A DNA stretch of 63,466 bases, the filler included, from Octopus bimaculoides (lineage: Eukaryota), in the NCBI RefSeq assembly GCF_001194135.2. It is 7 parts of 7 records of this genome, joined end to end, with 100 filler letters (N's around TTAATTAATTAA, not from the genome) between each part and the next. Parts side by side here need not be neighbours in the genome. Positions count along the whole stretch, not along the records: positions 48,154 to 56,624 come from NW_026310982.1; 6 more parts are not named here. One strand, given 5' to 3'. The position numbers were made by a program, and so were the translations under genes. A model generated the notes under the pieces. That model worked only from the letters and a program-made list of their open reading frames with translations. It searched no databases and was not told the origin of the DNA. Shown here piece after piece: positions 46,248 through 56,724 of this stretch. Positions within the stretch are counted from its first letter, which is position 1. Every line of letters begins with the position of its first letter.

Positions 46248-48161
46248 GTAGATTGCTTGCTGATTTATTGACATCACCTTTAAGACAGAAAAGGAAACAA
46301 ATATTGTTTTTGAGAGAATTTATTTATTAAAAAATTCCTTATTCTTTTTATTATTTTACTTTCTTAAGTCGTTGCTCTGCGGTCACAGCCACATGTGTGT
46401 GTCTCTTCCACGAATTTGTTTCCTCAAAACAGATATCTTTTAGATTTTTTAATGAAATTTTCAACAAATAATTTTTAGATGGTGTAAATTAAGATTCTAT
46501 CAAAATTTAATGTAAATAACAAAAAGGTGGGCACGCAGATATTCATGCTGACACATATCCCAATTTTCATTTTGTAGATATTATGTATTGTATGTCATTA
46601 TTTATGTGTGCCGCCTCCAAATATTTTTCACTACAAAATCCGATATAATCGGATTCCTCAACATCTCTAAGGTATTTGTAGAAAATTTCATTAAAATGTA
46701 TACATTTTAAGGAAACATTCTCAGGGTGTGGCACATCGGTCTGCAGTCATGCTGAGACACCGCCTTCAAGGGTTCTAATTAATTAAATCATTCCTACAAC
46801 TTATCTCCCCAGCATCTTTTGCTTTCTTCATTTGGTTGCTGTTTTTTTTTTTTCTTCCAAATTGCTAATAATTTATTTTGAAAAAGACGGTATAAAACTC
46901 GTTTGGATCTCGTATTGTCAGCAGCAATATTTGAAACTTCCGCGATACTAAAACAAGGGAAATTACTCCAGAGAAATTAATGGGAAATAACTCCCTTCTA
47001 GAATTAAAAGACCTGAGAATCCCCCCTCTCCAAAACACACACGCGCCATAACAATAATAATCCTTTCTACAATGGGCGCAAGGGTGAAATCCTGAGGTCA
47101 ATGCAATCAGTTAAGCCCCACTCCCACCAAAATTTCAGGCCTTGTGCCATTAGTAGAAACGACCATCATCAATCATCATCATCGTCGTCGTCAACATCGC
47201 CATCATCCCCATCATCTTCATCTTCATCACCATCATTATCAGCATCATCACCATCACCAGCGTCATCGTCGTCGTCATCATCATCATCATTCGACATTTT
47301 ATTTTTTTTCAGACAAATTTTTACTGCATCACCTGCTGCACGCACTGGGGTCGATGCAATCGACTTTTCCCAAAATTTCAAGCCTTAAGCCTATAGTAGG
47401 AAGGATTATTGTTATTGTTGTTGTTGTTGTTGTTGTTGTTCAACATGTGGCACCTCCATGTTTCTGAGGTTTGTGCAGCATTGTGTGTTTTTTTGTTTTT
47501 TTTTTTGCTGTTGGGAGTATGCAAACCCTTCCCGATATTGTATTGCATCAGTTTTTCCTTTCTTTACTTTCTTTTTGAGGTGTGCTGCTGACTTTTGCTG
47601 TAATAGTGTTTGCATCGTGTGTTGTGCGTATAATATAATGCATTGGGTAACCGGATTGCTGGTGGTAGTTTTATTTCATTGGATATTTGCTGTATGGAGT
47701 GTCTTGTCTTTGTGGCTTACTTTGTTTAGCTTGCATTATTGAGCTGATAGCGTCTTGCGTAGGATGTGGGCTGTTCCTAGCAGAGCTATATTCTGGATAG
47801 TGTGTAGTGTTGAGGATCCAGGTATAGCCTCTAAAAGCATAACGTATGCAATCCTGATGATGACAGTTACATATTACACACAATGATTATCATTTTTAAT
47901 ATTACATCAAAATTAAGTATCATTATATTAAGTATCAATTATACGAAACATACTTTTATAACACATCGTACATAATATACATTAAATATACAGAGACACT
48001 CCTCTGTGTGTGTGTGTGTGTGTTTGTGTACATACATACATACATATATATATNNNNNNNNNNNNNNNNNNNNNNNNNNNNNNNNNNNNNNNNNNNNTTA
48101 ATTAATTAANNNNNNNNNNNNNNNNNNNNNNNNNNNNNNNNNNNNNNNNNNNNATATTTAA

Positions 48162-48860
48162 TTATACTTAGAAAATGAATATTTTGTAGCGTGTAAACAA
48201 ATTCTATACGCATTCTATACAGCTAGAAATACCACGAACAACCAAACTAACAACCGTCCAACTAATAGAACTAACCCCAACCCTAATCCAATACCTCTTG
48301 TTAGGAGAGACACACACCAAAAAAACAATAGGACCACACAACAACACACAGACATAGACACCCCTTATAATCTATGTAGCTGTAGAGATAGGAATAAATG
48401 TAATTTCTCCAACAGATGTAAGACCGAAAATATAGTTTACCAATGCGACGTACACACAAACGGTCATATCAGATCTTACATTGGCGGTACGAAAAACCAA
48501 GTACGCCTCAGATACAATGAGCACCAATCTAGCTTTAGAAATAGAAAAAAGGCAAATTCAACAGGACTTAGTAGCTATATCTGGGAATTAAAGGACAATA
48601 AAATAGAGTATAAACTAAAGCGGCGTATACTAAAAGCAGCAAATTCTTATAACCCAACTAACAGACGCTGTGACTTCTGTCTAACTGAATGCATCAAAAT
48701 CCTAACGACTAGAAAGCATCTCTTAAACAAAAAATATGAAAATAATCTAATTTGTTTACACACTACAAAATATTCATTTTCTAAGTTGACTTGCTTCTTC
48801 TTGTGTTTGTTTCTCCATTCTCCACATAATTATAATTATAAACTGCGGTTTAAACAATAA
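48162..48860 (+). mobile_element. Penelope-like element, C-terminal GIY-YIG endonuclease ORF (232 codons, no ATG, truncated by the scaffold start)
   Basis: Manual translation is open from 48162 to the TAA at 48858-48860: ...LCSCRDRNKCNFSNRCKTENIVYQCDVHTNGHIRSYIGGTKNQVRLRYNEHQSSFRNRKKANSTGLSSYIWELKDNKIEYKLKRRILKAANSYNPTNRRCDFCLTECIKILTTRKHLLNKKYENNLICLH... It shows the IVY/YIG motifs, the R-Y-x-x-H motif, an N-terminal Cys cluster and CxxCLxE. Confidence 0.9.
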
Positions 48861-49861
48861 ATTACCTGCCTAGGATACCTTCTAACAAAGACGATACCCA
48901 CACAAGTAATTTCCAGGAGTGCCTTCGGATTTAAATATCCCCTGGTTGCTTAAATACTTCAGACTACCCCTGAAATATTGAAGCAATCCTATCATTTACC
49001 TATATACATACACACACANNNNNNNNNNNNNNNNNNNNNNNNNNNNNNNNNNNNNNNNNNNNNNNNNNNNNNNNNNNNNNNNNNNNNNNNNNNNNNNNNN
49101 NNNNNNNNNNNNNNNNNNNNNNNNNNNNNNNNNNNNNNNNNNNNNNNNNNNNNNNNNNNNNNNNNNNNNNNNNNNNNNNNNNNNNNNNNNNNNNNNNNNN
49201 NNNNNNNNNNNNNNNNNNNNNNNNNNNNNNNNNNNNNNNNNNNNNNNNNNNNNNNNNNNNNNNNNNNNNNNNNNNNNNNNNNNNNNNNNNNNNNNNNNNN
49301 NNNNNNCAAAAAGGAAGAAATAGTATTTACATATGTTTACTCGTTTGCCCGAGAGGTAATTAAAGAGACACTAACAATTCTAGTGGTAGTGACAAGATTG
49401 ACTCGCTAATTAGCAGTTGATAATGTAGAAAAAGGTTGTCTGTTAGTAGAGAGTGAAAGAGTAAGGAATGCACGGTGCTGACTAGAAAGGAAGGAAGGAT
49501 AGAGATGGCACCGTCTTTCGTGCGGCGGAAAGGGAAGTGCTGCTCTTGGTCATGGCTGACGCAAAAGGGGGTGTTGCTCCTTAGTCTCACTGACACGAAA
49601 AGGGCGGGGGTGGCTCCTTGGTCATAGCTGACACATAAGAGGAAGAGATAGGAAATTCTCTCTGTTATATCAGACTATGGTCAGTAATGTAGGTCAAACG
49701 CTAAACAAAGGACTGACCTTTCATTGAACAGCACAGGTCCTAGGGGGTCGAGTGTTTCCTCATCAATCATCTGGTGTGGAGAGGATTTCCCGCTCGTTTT
49801 GACAAGCAACAAGCAGGTGGATTTGGTTTCAAATCTCAGACAGGGTCAAGCCAGATCCCTT

Positions 49862-50025
49862 CATATCTTTTATCTCTTACTTGTTTCATTCATTAGACTG
49901 AATCGACTCAAGTAATTCTTTGTAAGCCTAGTATTTATTTTATTGGTTTCTTTTGCCGAACCGCTAGGTTACGGGGGCGTAAACACACCAGCACCATTTG
50001 ACAAGACGGTGGTGGGGGACAAACA
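49862..50025 (-). mobile_element. SINE family A, 3' half, abutting the 21-bp array
   Basis: It contains TCTCTTACTTGTTTCATTC...CTTTTGCCGAACCGCTAGGTTACGGGGGCGTAAACACACC...GGGGGACAAAC. Confidence 0.85.
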
Positions 50026-50030
50026 GAGAC

Positions 50031-51010
50031 ATCGCAGAAACCGACCGAAATATTGTAGAAACCGACTCAGATATCGTAGAAGCTGAGCAAGACATCGTTC
50101 GAGCCAACCGCAACACGCCAGAAACCGACACAGACATAATAGAAACCGACAGACGTATCGCAGAAAATTCGCGAGATATCGAGGAAACCGATCGACACAT
50201 CGTAAAATCCGATAGAGATATCGTAGAAACCGACAGGCACCTCGTAGAAATCGAACGAGACATCGTAGAGACCGACCCAGACATCATAGAAGAGATAGAG
50301 ACATCGTAGAAGCCTACGGAAACATCGTGGAAACTGATAAAGACGAAGAAGCTGATCGAGATATTGCAGATACTGACCCAGATATCATAGAAATCAAGCG
50401 AGGCATCGTAGAAACCGACCGAGACATCGTAGAATCCCGCACAAACAACGCAGAAATAGGTGGAGACATCATAGTACCCGAACGAGACATCGTTGAAATC
50501 GACCGATAAATCACGGAGAGAAATAGAGAGAGAGAGACCGACTGAGTCAACGTAGAATCCGAACGTGGCATCGTAGAAAAGTACCCAGACATTGTATAAA
50601 CCGAGTTTGACATCAAAGAAACCGAGTGAGACAGCCTAGAAACCGACACAGACATCGTAGTTGTCGACAGAGACATTGCAGAAACCGACGAGCTCCTCGT
50701 CGAAAACGAACCACACTTCGTACAAACCGACGCAGAGATCGAAGAAACCGATGGAAACAACGTAGAAACCCTCTGCGACATCGTTGTAACCGACCTGGTC
50801 TTCACAGAAACCGACCCGGCATCGTAGAAATCAAACGAAGCATCGTGGAAATCAACCGAGACATCGTAGAATGTGACAGAGTTGTCGTAGACGCCGACCC
50901 AGACATCGAAGAAGCCGGCCGAAACATCGTAGAATCTGACAGAGACATTATAAAAAACCAACAGAGACAGCGAAGAAACTCAACGTGACATCGCAGAAAC
51001 CGACCGATAC
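50031..51010 (+). repeat. Diverged 21-bp minisatellite, about 47 units, consensus ATCGTAGAAACCGACCGAGAC (left arm)
   Basis: Parsed unit by unit. Variation is mostly substitution, with about five indel units and several in-frame stops. Confidence 0.95.
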
Positions 51011-51020
51011 ATGATAGGAG

Positions 51021-51735
51021 GTTTCTGCTGATTTTTACGATGTCTCGGTAGGTTTCAACGATGTCTGGTTCGGTTTCTACGATGACTTGTTCGGCTTTTA
51101 TGATGTCTCAACCGATTTCTACGATGTTTCGGTGGGATTCTACGATGCCTCGGTCGGTTTCTACGATGTCTCGTTCGCTCGTTCTATTTCTACGTCGTCG
51201 TGTACTATTTCGACGATGTCTCGGTCAGTTTCTTATTTCTTTATTGCCCCCAGGGGGCTAAACATAGAGGGGACAAACAAGGACAGACAAAGGGATTAAG
51301 TCCATTACATCGACCCTAGTGCGTAACTGGTACTTAATTTATCGACCCCGAAAGGATGAAAGGCAAAGTCGACCTCGTCGTAATTTGAACTCGGAACGTA
51401 ACCGCAGACGAAATACCGCTAAGCATTTCGTCCGGCGTGCTAACGTTTCTGCCAGTGCGCCGCTTTGGTCAGTTCCTACGATGTCTCGGTCGGTTTCTAC
51501 GATGTCTCGGGTGGTTTCCACGATGTCTCGTTCGCTTTGTACGTTAGCTCGTTCGATTTCTGCGTCGTCGTGTGCTACTTCGACGATTTCTCGGTCGGCT
51601 TCTACGATGTCTACATTGGCTATGTCAGTTTTCACAATGCCTGGATCTCGTTCTACGACGTCTGGGTCGGACTCTACGATGTGTTGATCGTTTTCTACGG
51701 TGTTTTGGTCGGTTTCTGCAATGCCTGTGTCGGTG
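51021..51735 (-). repeat. The same 21-bp minisatellite in inverted orientation, about 22 units (right arm), interrupted by a SINE
   Basis: The plus strand shows repeated GTCTCGGTCGGTTTCTACGAT. The minus strand reads IAETDQN TVENDQH IVESDPD ... IVETDRD. Confidence 0.95.
51234..51464 (-). mobile_element. SINE family B, full length, inserted in the array with a ~13-bp target-site duplication
   Basis: The flanks are TCGGTCAGTTTCT (51221-51233) and TTGGTCAGTTCCT (51465-51477). Both share the non-consensus A. Confidence 0.9.
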
Positions 51736-51870
51736 GCATGAAGAGGGAAGACTGGTATACACGAGTAATTGCTAGTATTCCATAAACAACTTTGCCCAAA
51801 CTGGTGCTTCGCTGGGGGACTCTCGTGGTGCAATCCCATGGTCATATATGACCAAAGGTGGTCTTAACCC
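51735..51870 (+). mobile_element. SINE family C, 3' domain
   Basis: GAGGGAAGACTGGTATACACGAG...CCATAAACAACTTTGCCC...GTGCAATCCCATGGTCAT matches 27690-27775. Confidence 0.65.
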
Positions 51871-51879
51871 TAGTTGTCA

Positions 51880-52105
51880 GAATCGTAAGTGTTTCGCGGG
51901 GAAATGTTTAGCACCATTATTTATTTATTTATTTATTTATTTGTAGTACTTTTGCGTTCTGAGTTCAAATTCCGCTGAGGTCGACTTTGCCATTCATCCC
52001 TTTGTGGTCGATGAAATAAATAAGTATTTTTTGACCACTATGATCGATGTGAAGTCCTCTTCTCCTAAAATTGCCGGAATTGTGCAAAAATTAGAAAAAA
52101 ATGTT
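51880..52105 (+). mobile_element. SINE family B, degenerate
   Basis: It contains CGTTCTGAGTTCAAATTCCGCTGAGGTCGACTTTGCC. Confidence 0.8.
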
Positions 52106-52735
52106 TAGTAATATTAATATAAATAAAACTCAAACTTTTGTTTTGCGGCTTCGATCGAACCGTTTCCGTTTCGAAGCTGGCTTTCGTCTTTCTTTTGTCT
52201 CTTTCCCAGCGGCCATGCTGGAGTACCACTTTGAAGTATTTTAGTCCAACGAAGCGACCGCAGTTCATATATATGTATGTGTTTGCGTGTGTGGGATGTG
52301 GTAGACGGAAACTGAAAGGAACCCGTTGTATATATATGTATGCATATANNNNNNNNNNNNNNNNNNNNNNNNNNNNNNNNNNNNNNNNNNNNNNNNNNNN
52401 NNNNNNNNNNNNNNNNNNNNNNNNNNNNNNNNNNNNNNNNNNNNNNNNNNNNNNNNNNNNNNNNNNNNNNNNNNNNNNNNNNNNNNNNNNNNNNNNNNNN
52501 NNNNNNNNNNNNNNNNNNNNNNNNNNNNNNNNNNNNNNNNNNNNNNNNNNNNNNNNNNNNNNNNNNNNNNNNNNNNNNNNNNNNNNNNNNNNNNNNNNNN
52601 NNNNNNNNNNNNNNNNNNNNNNNNNNNNNNNNNNNNNNNNNNNNNNNNNNNNNNNNNNNNNNNNNNNNNNNNNNNNNNNNNNNNNNNNNNNNNNNNNNNN
52701 NNNNNNNNNNNNNNNNNNNNNNNNNNNNNNNNNNN

Positions 52736-52774
<39 letters not shown>

Positions 52775-52791
52775 TACAGATATATATATAC

Positions 52792-53215
52792 GCGCTGTGT
52801 GGTAAGAAGTTTGTTTTCCAACCACATGGTTCCGAGTTCAGTTCCGCAGCGTGACACCTTGGGCAAGTGTCTTCTACTTTAGCTTCGAACCAACCAAGAC
52901 CTTATGAGTAAATTTGGTAAACGGAAACTGATAGAAGCCCGTCATAGTTTTATATATATATATGTATATATGTGTGTGTGTGTGTGTGTGTGTTTGTGTA
53001 TTTGTGTCCGTGTTTGTCTTGCACTATTGATTGATAACGGTGTTAGTGTGTTTATGTTCCCGTAGCCTGGCGGTTCGGTAAAAGACACCGATAGAATAAG
53101 TATTAAGTTTCACAAAAATAATGTGGGCGATTCATTCGACTAGAATTCTTCAAGGTTGTGCCCCAGCATGGCCGCAGTCAAATGACTGAAACAAATAAAT
53201 GATAAAAAGAAAAGA
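52792..53215 (+). mobile_element. SINE family A, full length (a partial minus-strand copy lies at 52190-52330)
   Basis: The head GCTGTGTGGTAAGAAG...CCGAGTTCAGTTCCGC runs to the tail CCAGCATGGCCGCAGTCAAATGACTGAAACAA. Confidence 0.9.
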
Positions 53216-53675
53216 AAAAAGAAAACACACATACACAAAGGAGGGGAGGAGAAGTCAGAGGCAAAGAAGAAGTAGAGTGGTGGTAGAGAGAACGAGAATG
53301 AAAGAGAGAAAGGAGGGAGGTGAAAGTAACTAAAATGACCAACGGCCGGAGCTGACCGACGCCTCTTCGGACTTTCGTCGTCTTCATTTGGAAAAGCACT
53401 AATTACTTACCAGATTGGCCTGAGCAGATTTCAAGTGCGGCTTTAAGTAGCGTAAGCGACATCAATTCCAATTATTCTTACGTGGTCTGTCCTTCCCACC
53501 TCACCATCACCACCACCACCACCACCATCACCGCAGACCACCCCCAGCACTGTCTAATTATAAACTGCCTCTACACACACGTGCCCACACGCACATGAAT
53601 ATATACATATATGTACACGCACATGAATGCACGCATATATTTATATGTATATATATATACATACATGTATCTATG

Positions 53676-53717
<42 letters not shown>

Positions 53718-53842
53718 CAGAGAGAGAGGGGGAGAGATATGCATATATTATGGATAGATAGATTGATAGAAGATATGTATATATTATGCATATATATACG
53801 TATATATACAGAGAGAGAGAGGGGGGAGAGAGTGAGCTAGCT

Positions 53843-53897
<55 letters not shown>

Positions 53898-54151
53898 CAA
53901 GATAGATAGATATTTGATGACACCTAAATTCTTGAATAGAGGTTTCACAAACTCTGAGTGGCGATAAATAAAACTCACGAGAAGTGAAACGTGTGCATGT
54001 ATGTGTATACATACATACATACATACCTACATAACGTGTACATACATACATACGTATGCGTATATGTAAAGGCGCAGGTGCGCGTGTGTGTGCGTGCATA
54101 TATGAGTGCGTATACAGATGCACTGGTCAGACTTTTGTGCCGTAGACGCTC

Positions 54152-54185
<34 letters not shown>

Positions 54186-55147
54186 TTAAATTTAATTAGA
54201 GGTTGTGTTAACCTCATGAAGGGATGGATTCATCCAAGGAAATATTAGTTCAATATCTGGTATTTTGAGGGAAATAAATTTCCTTAAAATAATAGGCATA
54301 TATATATATATATATATNNNNNNNNNNNNNNNNNNNNNNNNNNNNNNNNNNNNNNNNNNNNNNNNNNNNNNNNNNNNNNNNNNNNNNNNNNNNNNNNNNN
54401 NNNNNNNNNNNNNNNNNNNNNNNNNNNNNNNNNNNNNNNNNNNNNNNNNNNNNNNNNNNNNNNNNNNNNNNNNNNNNNNNNNNNNNNNNNNNNNNNNNNN
54501 NNNNNNNNNNNNNNNNNNNNNNNNNNNNNNNNNNNNNNNNNNNNNNNNNNNNNNNNNNNNNNNNNNNNNNNNNNNNNNNNNNNNNNNNNNNNNNNNNNNN
54601 NNNNNNNNNNNNNNNNNNNNNNNNNNNNNNNNNNNNNNNNNNNNNNNNNNNNNNNNNNNNNNNNNNNNNNNNNNNNNNNNNNNNNNNNNNNNNNNNNNNN
54701 NNNNNNNNNNNNNNNNNNNNNNNNNNNNNNNNNNNNNNNNNNNNNNNNNNNNNNNNNNNNNNNNNNNNNNNNNNNNNNNNNNNNNNNNNNNNNNNNNNNN
54801 NNNNNNNNNNNNNNNNNNNNNNNNNNNNNNNNNNNNNNNNNNNNATAACAGAGAAAAACAGTATGCGAGGAAAACAGACCGAATTAAAACATTTAACAAC
54901 ACAAATAAAAATATTATGCATACTTTATTTTTATATAAAAGAAGAAAAAGAAAATGGAGATTGGGAAGATAATAATTGTTTATAATTAACAGCAAATTGG
55001 TCATTTTCAACGGGTTTAAGTGAAGATGATCAATTTACTGTTAATAATAAACAGCTATTAACTTCACAATCTCCATTTGCTTCTTCTTTTAAATGAATAT
55101 AAAATATATTTGCGCGCGTGCGCATGCGTGTGTGTGTGAGAGAGCAA

Positions 55148-55183
55148 AGTCTGACGAAGGTAGGCCGAAACTTGTAAGTTACT
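55148..55183 (+). ncRNA. Minimal type I hammerhead ribozyme motif (Penelope-type)
   Basis: AGT-CTGACGA-A-GG-TAGG-CC-GAAA-CTT-GT-AAG-T-T/ACT. Stem I is AGT:ACT, stem II is GG:CC, and stem III is ACTT:AAGT, lying in the self-complementary AACTTGTAAGTT. Predicted cleavage is after GUU at 55180. Confidence 0.7.
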
Positions 55184-55361
55184 GTCAACCTTTTCATTGT
55201 AAAAGTTTTATAAATATGTACGCTACTAATAGTTATTGAGAAATCCTTCAGCTTGTGTGTGTGTATATATATGTGTATGTGTGTGTGTATATATATGTGT
55301 ATGTGTGTGTGTGTGTATGTGTGTATGTATGTATGTATGTATGTATGTATATATAAAATAC

Positions 55362-55625
55362 AAAAATAGGACAAAAACGCAAAACATCCAGACAGGTGAA
55401 ACAAAAAAGGGACATCAAAACATCCAGATAGACGACACAAGGAAAACAAGGACGGGTCATTCGGAGTTTTCTATCCTCAGTCGAGTTCCAGATTATCTTT
55501 GCAATTTCGGCTGGCTATTCTCGAGATTGCTCCAATCTGGCCAGCCCCAAGGAAAAAATAAGCTAAGAGCATTAGATTCATTGGAAGAAAGCAGCGAATG
55601 TATACACACAAATATATATTCATGC
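55362..55625. mobile_element. Interspersed repeat, probably Penelope-derived and non-autonomous
   Basis: An A-rich spacer is followed by GGGTCATTCGGAGTTTTCTATCCTCAGTCGAG. The layout resembles 45945-46115 and 22250-22360. Confidence 0.4.
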
Positions 55626-56064
55626 AAAAGCTAAGTTAGGGACAGTGGTTGTGGTATTGTTATTGCATTCTGAAAACCTTGATTCTGTATCTCGAAAGGA
55701 ATCAATACATGGTACTTTTACATGAAATTTGTACCTATAGCATTATTCCTATTACATTGATGCTCGAACGATTTATGATGATAGAGAGAGTAAGCGATCA
55801 TTTACCAAATTGTTCTTGTAGACGTGTGTGTGCAGAAAATGAAATCTGGTAAAGAGTTACACTAGTTAGCTTGGTGCTGTATGTTGTTGTGGATTGTGTA
55901 GGATATGAAGAAGGTTTAGTTGTGATTCTCTTACCTCTTTTGCTATTCTGTATTGTCTGAAAACCACATGTTCAGTGACTCTAATCCTCTTGCGATTATT
56001 ACTATAATCACGTTACCGCTCTAATACGTGTGCCTGAAAAGAGGATTCTGCGGCGAGGTGCTGA

Positions 56065-56283
56065 CAAAAATATTCTTTTCTACTCTAGGCACAAGGCCCG
56101 AAATTTTTGGTGAGGGAGCCAGTCGATTAGATCAACCCCTGTACGCAACTGGTACTTAATTTATTGACCCTGAAAAGATAAAGGGCAAAGTTGACCACAG
56201 CGGAATTTGAACTCAGAACGTAAAGACAGACGAAATGCCGCTAAGCATTTCACCCAGCGTGATAAAGATTCTTCCAGCTCGCC
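56065..56283 (-). mobile_element. SINE family B, near full length
   Basis: It contains TACTCTAGGCACAAGGCCCGAAATTTTTGG...GGAATTTGAACTCAGAACGTAAAGACAGACGAAATGCCGC. Confidence 0.9.
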
Positions 56284-56313
56284 AGCATGGCCGCAGTCTA
56301 GTGAATGAAACAA

Positions 56314-56570
56314 GTCGTCGTCGTGGCTATCCCTCTTTCTTCAAAGGATGATGGATTTGTTCTAATCTATGTTGGGTTGTTGCTGTACTCGAAGGCGGCC
56401 GATGAGTCCATTTTGGTCTTTGGGGGATCTTCTGCAAGTCGAATTCTTCCTTGTGGATGATTTCGTCTGAGTTGGGGTTGCGTCTCATTCCTTCTTCTTC
56501 GCTTGTCTCGAATATAATTGTTCCTTCACAGATGATGGAACTCCAGAGGGTTTCGCTCATTTTCATTTTC
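56314..56570 (-). mobile_element. RTE LINE 3' end fragment with (GAC)n tail
   Basis: The minus strand reads TLWSSIICEGTIIFE (DRxxWRxxIxEG-like), then a frameshifted GLIGRLRV (IGLISHLRTH-like), ending in GACGACGAC. Confidence 0.6.
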
Positions 56571-56724
56571 TTCCCAGGCGCAGGAGTGGCTGTGTGGTAA
56601 GTAGCTTGCCTACCAACCACATGGNNNNNNNNNNNNNNNNNNNNNNNNNNNNNNNNNNNNNNNNNNNNTTAATTAATTAANNNNNNNNNNNNNNNNNNNN
56701 NNNNNNNNNNNNNNNNNNNNNNNN

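What the first reader, a model, noticed from the sequence alone, without database searches (positions are those of the whole stretch)
50031..51735. Foldback-like convergent array of a 21-bp unit
Seen in sequence: about 47 copies of ATCGTAGAAACCGACCGAGAC point right (50031-51010) and meet about 22 copies pointing left (51021-51735) across a ~10-bp centre (ATGATAGGAG). Both outer ends start with the same variant unit (IAETD). The arms are not exact mirrors and differ in length. Established: long inverted repeats built from tandem subunits are the hallmark of Foldback-type DNA transposons, where the subunits are transposase-binding sites. Inference: this may be an uncharacterised cephalopod foldback-like element, or an inverted satellite. 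If transcribed, it would form a long imperfect dsRNA, a likely ADAR or siRNA substrate. SINE fragments hide both outer termini, so no TSD is visible.
Basis: partly seen in the sequence, partly recalled or inferred. Interest (0 to 1): 0.75.

Follow-up and report, generated by a model that had tools for sequence, protein, structure and literature searches.

The report
Head-to-head 21-bp minisatellite arrays
Two old, decayed runs of the same 21-base repeat face each other in junk-rich non-coding DNA; the structure is real in the sequence, but nothing I could test shows it is a jumping gene or has a function.

Summary
There are 46.7 units of ATCGTAGAAACCGACCGAGAC on the + strand (50031-51010), a 10-nt centre (51011-51020), and 22.4 units of the same consensus on the - strand (51021-51734). 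A 233-bp SINE with an 11-bp target duplication interrupts the right arm. Strand partition is absolute (44/0 versus 0/21 hits; 0.3 expected in shuffles).

The array is not coding: no third-codon-position signal, stops and frameshifts present, and no Pfam or protein-database match. Units are about 64% alike within and between arms. One 104-bp inverted block (85% identity; 0 of 300 unit-order shuffles reach its score) shows the arms are paralogous.

The features that define a Foldback transposon are not seen. I found no target-site duplication, no terminal similarity clearly above background, and no inverted flanking domain. Copy number could not be tested because no source genome or reads were available. 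There is also no mirror symmetry about the junction.

Most likely this is an ancient inverted duplication of an already degenerate minisatellite, later scrambled by unequal exchange. A relic Foldback-like element (about 0.25) and a misassembly (about 0.1) remain open. The predicted hairpin RNA is very imperfect, with a longest helix of 18 bp. Interest is low to moderate.

The parts
49888..50030 (-). Left flank: the tail of a SINE-like interspersed repeat. Its similarity to another copy in the piece ends exactly where the array begins. In that other copy, an internal (TG)n microsatellite starts at the same point.
   Evidence: blastn 49888-50031 versus 53146-53005: 72.6% over 146 bp, E 2.6e-18. 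Alignment A1. TRF finds (TG)n at 52971-53007.
50031..51010 (+). Left arm: 46.7 units of ATCGTAGAAACCGACCGAGAC. Units match the consensus at 13-21 of 21 positions. Small phase shifts occur at about 50283, 50342, 50821 and 50948. A GA-rich degenerate stretch lies at 50510-50548.
51011..51020 (.). Non-repeat centre, ATGATAGGAG. Taken more broadly, an 18-nt loop (51002-51019) lies between a 9-bp inverted pair, GCAGAAACC (50993-51001) and GGTTTCTGC (51020-51028).
   Evidence: Sequence. DNA fold -19.1 kcal/mol, z -4.2, 0 of 200 shuffles as stable.
51021..51233 (-). Right arm, inner part: about 10 units of the same consensus in reverse orientation.
51234..51466 (-). SINE inserted into the right arm, with its A-rich tail at the left end. 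It is flanked by the target duplication GGTCAGTTTCT (51223-51233) and GGTCAGTTCCT (51467-51477). Removing the SINE and one duplicate restores a 21-nt unit in phase.
   Evidence: 80% identity to another copy at 56113-56283, E 1.6e-39.
51478..51734 (-). Right arm, outer part: about 12 units, ending in a 12-nt partial unit at 51723-51734.
50399..50502 (+). Left copy of the only clearly collinear inter-arm block. It pairs in inverted order with 51070-51173.
   Evidence: 84.6% over 104 bp, score 56. Unit-order shuffles of the right arm: mean 32, maximum 48, 0 of 300 reach 56. Unit-level test: 2 of 500.
51070..51173 (-). Right copy of the inter-arm block.
   Evidence: (I6).
51476..51603 (-). Internal direct duplication within the right arm. 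It is the partner of 51119-51233 and includes the unusual units IVEVAHD/IVEIVHD, which match at 19 of 21.
   Evidence: 78.9% over 128 bp, score 44. Unit matrix.
51951..52106 (+). SINE fragment in the right flank, of the same family as the inserted SINE. It begins 216 bp beyond the end of the array.
   Evidence: blastn against 56224-56068 (E 1.4e-17) and 51401-51307 (E 1e-16).

Best explanation
This is a non-coding 21-bp minisatellite present as two paralogous arrays in head-to-head orientation. It is an inverted minisatellite, and I found no sign that it moves.

Inferred history:
1. A 21-bp unit expanded by slippage and unequal exchange, then diverged.
2. The already degenerate array was copied in inverted orientation next to itself by a DNA-level event. 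Hairpin-primed fold-back synthesis or a replication template switch are the likely kinds.
3. Both arms then turned over independently by unequal exchange, small indels and a 5-unit duplication in the right arm.
4. At least one ~100-bp tract was exchanged or copied between the arms.
5. A SINE inserted into the right arm.

I expect no sequence-specific function. The only predictable property is structural: the locus can form an imperfect hairpin or cruciform, or a long, heavily mismatched dsRNA if it is read through.

Shown here: the anatomy, the non-coding status, the shared ancestry of the arms, and the age relative to the SINE. Inferred: the mechanism and order of events.
For: - Same consensus in both arms, with unit identity of 63% and 65% within the arms and 64% between them. 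The arms therefore draw on one unit pool.
- The best-matching pair of segments anywhere in the structure is an inverted inter-arm block: 84.6% over 104 bp, with 0 of 300 unit-order shuffles reaching its score. This is far closer than the average unit pair, so the copy or exchange post-dates most unit divergence.
- The exact variant AT[CT]GCAGAAACC occurs four times, three of them at array ends (50031, 50990, 51711). The fourth end carries it with a 1-nt insertion. This suggests each arm is a whole array that has kept its edge units.
- A SINE with an 11-bp target duplication interrupts the right arm in phase. The arm is therefore genuine, old genomic DNA.
- Not coding: mean conservation at codon positions 1, 2 and 3 is 74%, 79% and 80%. 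Stops and frameshifts are present. There is no Pfam match, and two protein searches found nothing.
- No target-site duplication and no inverted flank similarity.
- The junction has a 9-bp stem and an 18-nt loop. That falls within the stem (4-15 bp) and large-loop (15 nt or more; median 36 nt) ranges reported for hairpin-primed foldback inversions in yeast (PMC7467729).
Against: - There is no mirror symmetry about the junction. The innermost 120 nt of the arms are 66% alike, which is background. A simple fold-back copy is therefore not visible and has to be assumed erased.
- Only 5 of about 22 right-arm units have a detectable collinear partner.
- A copying event that stops exactly at the array edge, taking no flank with it, is awkward for a fold-back model and more natural for an element with defined ends.
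- The 9-bp junction stem is largely what two in-phase inverted units would give anyway.
- Copy number in the genome is unknown.
Confidence: 0.5

Rival explanations
1. A relic of a non-autonomous Foldback-like DNA transposon. The two arms are its terminal inverted repeats, built of 21-bp subrepeats, with almost no middle domain. It is old enough that its target-site duplication has decayed.
For: - The overall architecture matches the Foldback scheme of long, internally repetitive inverted repeats of unequal length (PMC4079207).
- Both outer ends stop in the same unit phase with the same variant unit. The first 47 nt are 79% alike against a 64% background.
- The flanks on the two sides are unrelated to each other, as expected for an insertion.
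- The left end is flush with a SINE's internal microsatellite, a plausible insertion target.
Against: - No target-site duplication. A 6-mer is the best match, and about one such match is expected by chance.
- Terminal similarity is about 2 SD above background and covers only about 1.5 units. One side of it is explained by the SINE tail.
- No inverted flanking domain.
- The rest of the SINE is not detectable on the right side (15 of 400 and 202 of 400 shuffles do as well).
- The same variant unit also sits at the inner ends, which a terminal-repeat model does not predict.
- No transposase-like ORF in the piece.
- No other copy was found in any accessible collection, although none of them holds the source genome.
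Confidence: 0.25
2. An assembly artefact. Two separate single-orientation arrays of the same minisatellite family, or two haplotypes, were joined head-to-head at 51010-51020 by the assembler or a gap-closing step.
For: - The piece is a draft scaffold with three N gaps, and the array lies in a 3-kb contig.
- Tandem repeats are common sites of misjoins.
- The junction could not be checked against reads.
Against: - The junction is inside a contig, not at a gap.
- The units are degenerate (64% pairwise), so most long k-mers are unique.
- The only inverted identity at the junction is 9 bp. I judge that too short to cause a graph misjoin; this is inference.
- The arms are not reverse-complement copies of each other. 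The best block is 85% identical, which rules out a palindromic read artefact.
Confidence: 0.1
3. A functional hairpin-RNA locus. Transcription through both arms gives a dsRNA that is edited by ADAR or processed into small RNAs.
For: The inverted arrangement roughly doubles the predicted folding energy: -608.7 kcal/mol versus -264 for the same arms in direct orientation, and -407 +/- 12 for shuffles. There are 383 inter-arm pairs.
Against: - The longest uninterrupted helix is 18 bp, and arm complementarity is about 70-75%.
- The arms show neutral-looking decay, unequal lengths and a SINE insertion, with no sign of selection to keep them pairing.
- No expression data could be obtained.
Confidence: 0.04
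4. Decayed coding sequence for a heptad-repeat protein, (IVETDRD)n, duplicated in convergent orientation.
For: The period of 21 bp equals 7 codons, and a 103-aa open frame exists at 49998-50309.
Against: - Five of the six frames of the consensus are open by construction, so long ORFs are expected.
- Several stops and frameshifts occur.
- Third codon positions are not more variable than the others.
- No Pfam family reaches its threshold.
- Two protein-database searches gave no hit at E <= 0.001.
Confidence: 0.01

Closest known systems
Foldback-type DNA transposons (Drosophila FB, Galileo, Tetris; sea-urchin TU elements)
   Same: Long inverted arms made of short tandem subrepeats. The arms are unequal and imperfect, the middle is small or absent, and there is no coding capacity (PMC4079207).
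   Different: No target-site duplication. No conserved terminal or flanking domain. Copy number and any transposase are unknown. The unit variant that marks the outer ends also marks the inner ends.
Fold-back inversions / inverted duplications made by hairpin-primed synthesis or template switching
   Same: A head-to-head junction with a short spacer (10-18 nt) and a short inverted microhomology (9 bp), in the range described for yeast foldback inversions (PMC7467729).
   Different: These events give arms that mirror each other outward from the junction. Here the innermost 120 nt are only at background similarity, and the one collinear block is offset by about 225 bp from the symmetry axis.
Dispersed minisatellite or satellite-like arrays associated with mobile elements in molluscs (for example Helentron-borne arrays in oysters)
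   Same: A short tandem array embedded in TE-rich DNA and abutting a mobile-element fragment at a defined point (PMC7492417 and PMC5139131, listed but not read).
   Different: Those arrays are described as single-orientation cores inside a defined element (my recollection). Here there are two orientations, and no complete carrier element is recognisable.
Hairpin-RNA (hpRNA) loci and inverted-repeat ADAR substrates
   Same: An inverted repeat that could fold into a long dsRNA.
   Different: The duplex is much less perfect (longest helix 18 bp), and there is no evidence of transcription.

Membership tests
Foldback-type DNA transposon | Long terminal inverted repeats containing tandem subrepeats | tested here: met
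   Arms of 980 bp on + and 470 bp on -, built of the same 21-bp unit, with absolute strand partition.
Foldback-type DNA transposon | Both ends share a conserved terminal sequence or flanking domain | tested here: inconclusive
   The first 47 nt are 79% alike against a 64% background, about 2 SD. The outer 120 nt are 66% alike. Nothing outside the arrays shows inverted similarity.
Foldback-type DNA transposon | Target-site duplication of about 8-10 bp flanking the element | tested here: not met
   Only CGGTGG recurs (8-mer with one mismatch). About 0.9 such matches are expected by chance, and it is placed inside the SINE tail and inside the last unit. Decay of an old duplication cannot be excluded.
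Foldback-type DNA transposon | Multiple dispersed copies with the same ends; presence/absence polymorphism | not testable with these tools
The protein database, metagenome contigs and prokaryote genome contigs hold no relative. No cephalopod genome is on hand.
Foldback-type DNA transposon | A cognate transposase (Mutator- or P-like) in autonomous copies | not testable with these tools
   Among the ORFs of at least 70 aa in the piece, the four scanned against Pfam, together with one further open frame at 48201-48842, reached no family threshold. Autonomous copies would lie elsewhere.
Minisatellite / tandem array | Head-to-tail units of constant period, far above chance | tested here: met
   TRF period 21. 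Autocorrelation is 0.58 and 0.66 at lag 21 against about 0.2 at lags 20 and 22, and lower at lag 42, so there is no higher-order unit. Shuffles give 0.3 hits against 65 observed.
Minisatellite / tandem array | Non-coding | tested here: met
Fold-back (palindromic) inverted duplication | The arms mirror each other outward from the junction | tested here: not met
   The innermost 120 nt are 66% alike, which is background. The best block has its symmetry axis at about 50786, not 51010.
Fold-back (palindromic) inverted duplication | A short spacer with inverted microhomology at the junction | tested here: met
   9-bp stem at 50993-51001 / 51020-51028 with an 18-nt loop. Inverted in-phase units would partly produce this anyway.
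hpRNA / ADAR-substrate inverted repeat | A long, nearly continuous RNA duplex | tested here: not met
   383 inter-arm pairs, but the longest helix is 18 bp and only 20 helices reach 8 bp.
hpRNA / ADAR-substrate inverted repeat | Transcription through both arms, with editing or small RNAs | not testable with these tools

The most novel reading that the evidence does not exclude
The locus is one old copy of an undescribed cephalopod Foldback-like transposon family. Its terminal inverted repeats are arrays of a 21-bp subrepeat, and it may seed the 21-bp minisatellite elsewhere in the genome.
Probability: 0.2. Interest if true: 0.45.

Novelty: new member of a known kind. Interest (0 to 1): 0.25.

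Why it matters
As it stands, the locus matters little. It is one decayed inverted minisatellite in repeat-rich DNA, useful mainly as a caution for repeat annotation and as a possible site of hairpin-driven instability or misassembly.

If the genome turns out to hold many such loci with shared ends and target duplications, it would define a Foldback-like family in cephalopods. My literature searches found no such family described. That would also give a concrete case of a transposon seeding a minisatellite, as shown for Tetris in Drosophila virilis (PMC4079207).

If the locus is transcribed, it would be a natural, highly mismatched dsRNA in an animal group known for heavy RNA editing. However, the predicted duplex is poor.

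Tried and rejected
- Coding heptad repeat. Rejected on the codon-position profile, stops and frameshifts, Pfam and two protein-database searches.
- Reads across the junction, and expression.
- Other copies of the array. Exact-pattern scans of metagenome and prokaryote genome contigs gave 0 hits with a 27-mer pattern. A looser two-unit pattern gave only chance hits, and none of the loci fetched from the two scans carries the array.
- Simple palindrome about the junction, and terminal-repeat-like correspondence from the outer ends. Both are at background identity.
- Unit-level collinearity. Only one block of 3-5 units was found.
- 42-bp higher-order repeat suggested by TRF. Not supported by autocorrelation.
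- Right flank as the missing head of the left-flank SINE. Not significant, and the wrong orientation scores as well.
- CpG decay as a sign of germline methylation. It is weak: divergence is 25.8% at CpG positions against 20.2% elsewhere, and CpG observed/expected is still 1.6-1.8.
- Rfam and tRNA scans. These gave only sub-threshold mir-297-type hits on TG/TA microsatellites, and no tRNA.
- Literature. I found no paper on cephalopod satellites or Foldback elements.

Full report
**Setting.** The usable piece (48154-56624) is a draft scaffold with three internal N gaps: 49019-49306, 52349-52735 and 54318-54844. The feature lies entirely within one 3,042-bp contig (49307-52348), so the central junction is not a scaffold join. 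The surroundings are SINE fragments and microsatellites. I saw no convincing gene. ORFs of at least 70 aa outside the array are low-complexity or gap-spanning. The two non-array frames I scanned, at 48201-48842 and 56330-56620, have no Pfam match. Rfam hits are sub-threshold matches on TG/TA repeats, and no tRNA is found.

- Tandem Repeats Finder reports period-21 arrays over 50023-51012. It reports the reverse-complement unit over 51032-51177, 51467-51612 and 51651-51717.
- A position-by-position parse gives 45-46 forward units from 50031 to 51010. It gives 21-25 reverse units from 51021 to 51722, plus a 12-nt partial unit to 51734.
- The majority consensus of each arm, computed separately, is the same 21-mer: ATCGTAGAAACCGACCGAGAC.
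- Strand partition is absolute. The left arm has 44 forward and 0 reverse matches (at least 14/21), and the right arm has 0 forward and 21 reverse. The remaining 4.6 kb of the piece has none. Shuffles of the region give 0.3 on average and at most 3.
- AT skew flips sign at the centre.
- Autocorrelation peaks at lag 21 (0.58 and 0.66) and is lower at lag 42. The 42-bp period listed by TRF is therefore not a higher-order unit.
- The 10-nt centre ATGATAGGAG is at 51011-51020. Both outermost full units are the GCA ('IAETD') variant.

The right arm is interrupted by a 233-bp SINE (51234-51466, on the - strand, with its A-rich tail at the left end). The SINE is flanked by an 11-bp target duplication, GGTCAGTTTCT / GGTCAGTTCCT. 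Removing the SINE and one duplicate restores a 21-nt unit exactly in phase. The SINE is 80% identical to another copy at 56113-56283. This shows that the right arm was already an array when the SINE arrived. Its net length is 470 bp (22.4 units), against 980 bp (46.7 units) on the left.

**Not coding.** The period equals seven codons, and one frame reads IVETDRD. However, five of the six frames of the consensus lack stops by construction, so long ORFs carry no information.
- The arms contain several stops and phase shifts of +/-1.
- Mean conservation at codon positions 1, 2 and 3 is about 74%, 79% and 80%, so there is no wobble signal.
- No Pfam family reaches its threshold.
- Two searches of the large protein collection, using ORFs that cover three of the open frames, returned nothing at E <= 0.001.

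**Relationship of the arms.** Mean pairwise unit identity is 63% within the left arm, 65% within the right arm and 64% between them. The array is therefore old, and the arms are no more different from each other than units within one arm.

Most of the similarity between arms is simply shared consensus. One block stands out: 50399-50502 pairs in inverted order with 51173-51070 at 84.6% over 104 bp, with score 56. The next-best inter-arm score is 35. The best within-left score is 34 and the best within-right score is 44.

Shuffling the order of the right-arm units never reaches 56 (mean 32, maximum 48, 0 of 300). A unit-level test that scores only shared non-consensus bases recovers the same block (2 of 500). 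The arms are therefore truly paralogous. At least one copying or conversion event between them is younger than most unit divergence.

The right arm also contains a direct duplication of about 5 units, 51119-51233 and 51476-51603, at 79%.

**What is not there.**
- Mirror symmetry. The innermost 120 nt of the two arms are 66% alike, which is background. The symmetry axis of the one good block is near 50786, not 51010.
- Extended terminal similarity. The outer 120 nt are also 66% alike, and only the first 47 nt reach 79%.
- Inverted similarity between the flanks. The left flank matches only another SINE-like copy in the piece, and the right flank matches only SINE fragments starting at 51951.
- A target-site duplication. 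The best candidate is the 6-mer CGGTGG (an 8-mer with one mismatch). About 0.9 such matches are expected by chance in the windows searched. It also falls inside the SINE tail on one side and inside the last unit on the other.

**Edges.** Two details are worth keeping.

First, the left flank 49888-50031 is the tail of a SINE-like repeat (E 2.6e-18 against 53146-53005). Its similarity stops exactly at the first array unit. In the other copy, that is the point where an internal (TG)n microsatellite begins. I could not show that the rest of that repeat lies to the right of the array.

Second, the exact variant AT[CT]GCAGAAACC occurs only four times. Three are at array ends (50031, 50990 and 51711 on the reverse strand). 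The fourth end carries it with a 1-nt insertion, seen in reverse complement at 51020-51032. By a post-hoc hypergeometric count this has a probability of about 3e-4. It fits the idea that each arm is a complete array whose edge units escaped internal turnover. A terminal-repeat model does not predict it for the inner ends.

**Folding.** The junction can form a 9-bp stem (50993-51001 with 51020-51028) around an 18-nt loop. As DNA, 50969-51062 folds at -19.1 kcal/mol, with z -4.2.

As RNA, the two arms without the SINE fold at -608.7 kcal/mol, with 383 inter-arm pairs. The same arms placed in direct orientation give -264, and shuffles give -407 +/- 12. However, the longest uninterrupted helix is 18 bp. 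The 'long imperfect dsRNA' would be very imperfect, and transcription could not be examined.

**Related sequences.** Exact-pattern scans of metagenome contigs and of prokaryote genomes gave nothing with a 27-nt pattern. A two-unit pattern gave only chance matches, and no fetched locus carries the array. None of the collections on hand contains a cephalopod genome. The decisive question, whether other copies exist and what they look like, therefore stays open.

**Interpretation.** The simplest account of everything seen is an inverted minisatellite. An already degenerate 21-bp array was copied in inverted orientation beside itself. Both arms then turned over by unequal exchange and indels. A ~100-bp tract was later exchanged between them, and a SINE landed in one arm.

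The junction anatomy falls within the range reported for hairpin-primed foldback inversions in yeast, where stems are 4-15 bp and loops run from a few nucleotides to tens of nucleotides (PMC7467729). The expected mirror symmetry is not visible, though, so this step is inference. I give this account a probability of 0.5.

A relic Foldback-like transposon fits the gross architecture described for such elements: internally repetitive inverted repeats, unequal arms and 8-10-bp target duplications (PMC4079207). It also fits the clean outer edges. It fails or is inconclusive on every defining feature that I could test, and I give it 0.25.

A misjoin cannot be excluded without reads. It is disfavoured because the junction is inside a contig, the units are degenerate, and the arms are not reverse complements of each other. 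I give it 0.1. A selected hairpin-RNA role (0.04) and a coding origin (0.01) are unlikely.

**Verdict.** The locus is a new example of a known kind of structure, of low to moderate interest unless a genome-wide search shows it to be a transposon family.

Noticed in passing
window 51223-51477: A 233-bp SINE (51234-51466, - strand, A-rich tail) is inserted into a unit of the right arm. It has an 11-bp target duplication (10 of 11 identical), and the array phase is restored exactly on excision. This gives a relative date: the array is older than the SINE insertion.
   Followed up: yes
window 49888-50031 versus 53005-53146 and 52971-53007: The left flank is the tail of a SINE-like repeat, and its similarity ends exactly at the first array unit. 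In the other copy an internal (TG)n microsatellite starts at that point. I could not decide whether the array replaced, grew from, or inserted into that microsatellite. The expected remainder of the repeat is not detectable on the right side.
   Followed up: partly
window 50031, 50675, 50990, 51711 (reverse strand), 51020-51032: The exact variant AT[CT]GCAGAAACC occurs four times among about 67 units. Three of the four are at array ends, and the fourth end carries it with a 1-nt insertion. The post-hoc probability is about 3e-4. This may be an edge effect in which the founder unit is preserved. It remains unexplained.
   Followed up: partly
window 50510-50548: A GA-rich, non-unit stretch (ATCACGGAGAGAAATAGAGAGAGAGAGACCGACTGAGTC) interrupts the left arm. 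The left arm may therefore be two sub-arrays.
   Followed up: no
window 48201-48842 (+ strand, frame of 48156): A 214-aa open stretch, Cys/His- and Lys/Arg-rich (…CSCRDRNKCNFSNRCKTENIVYQCDVHTNGHIRSYIGGTKNQVRLRYNEHQSSF…), with no Pfam hit at E <= 0.1. From memory it resembles nuclease-type domains of retroelements. This was not tested.
   Followed up: partly
window 52796-53146; 56068-56300; 56575-56624; 51951-52106; 52290-52348: Several further copies or fragments of two SINE-like families, in both orientations, plus long (GATA)n, (TG)n and (TGTA)n arrays at 53676-53912, 54155-54183 and 55254-55354. The Rfam 'mir-297' and 'mir-466' hits all fall on these microsatellites and are far below the gathering scores.
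   Followed up: partly
window 50031-51734: The array keeps a high CpG content (observed/expected 1.6-1.8, against 0.85 in the rest of the contig). CpG positions are only slightly more diverged than others (25.8% against 20.2%), which suggests little germline methylation of this locus.
   Followed up: partly
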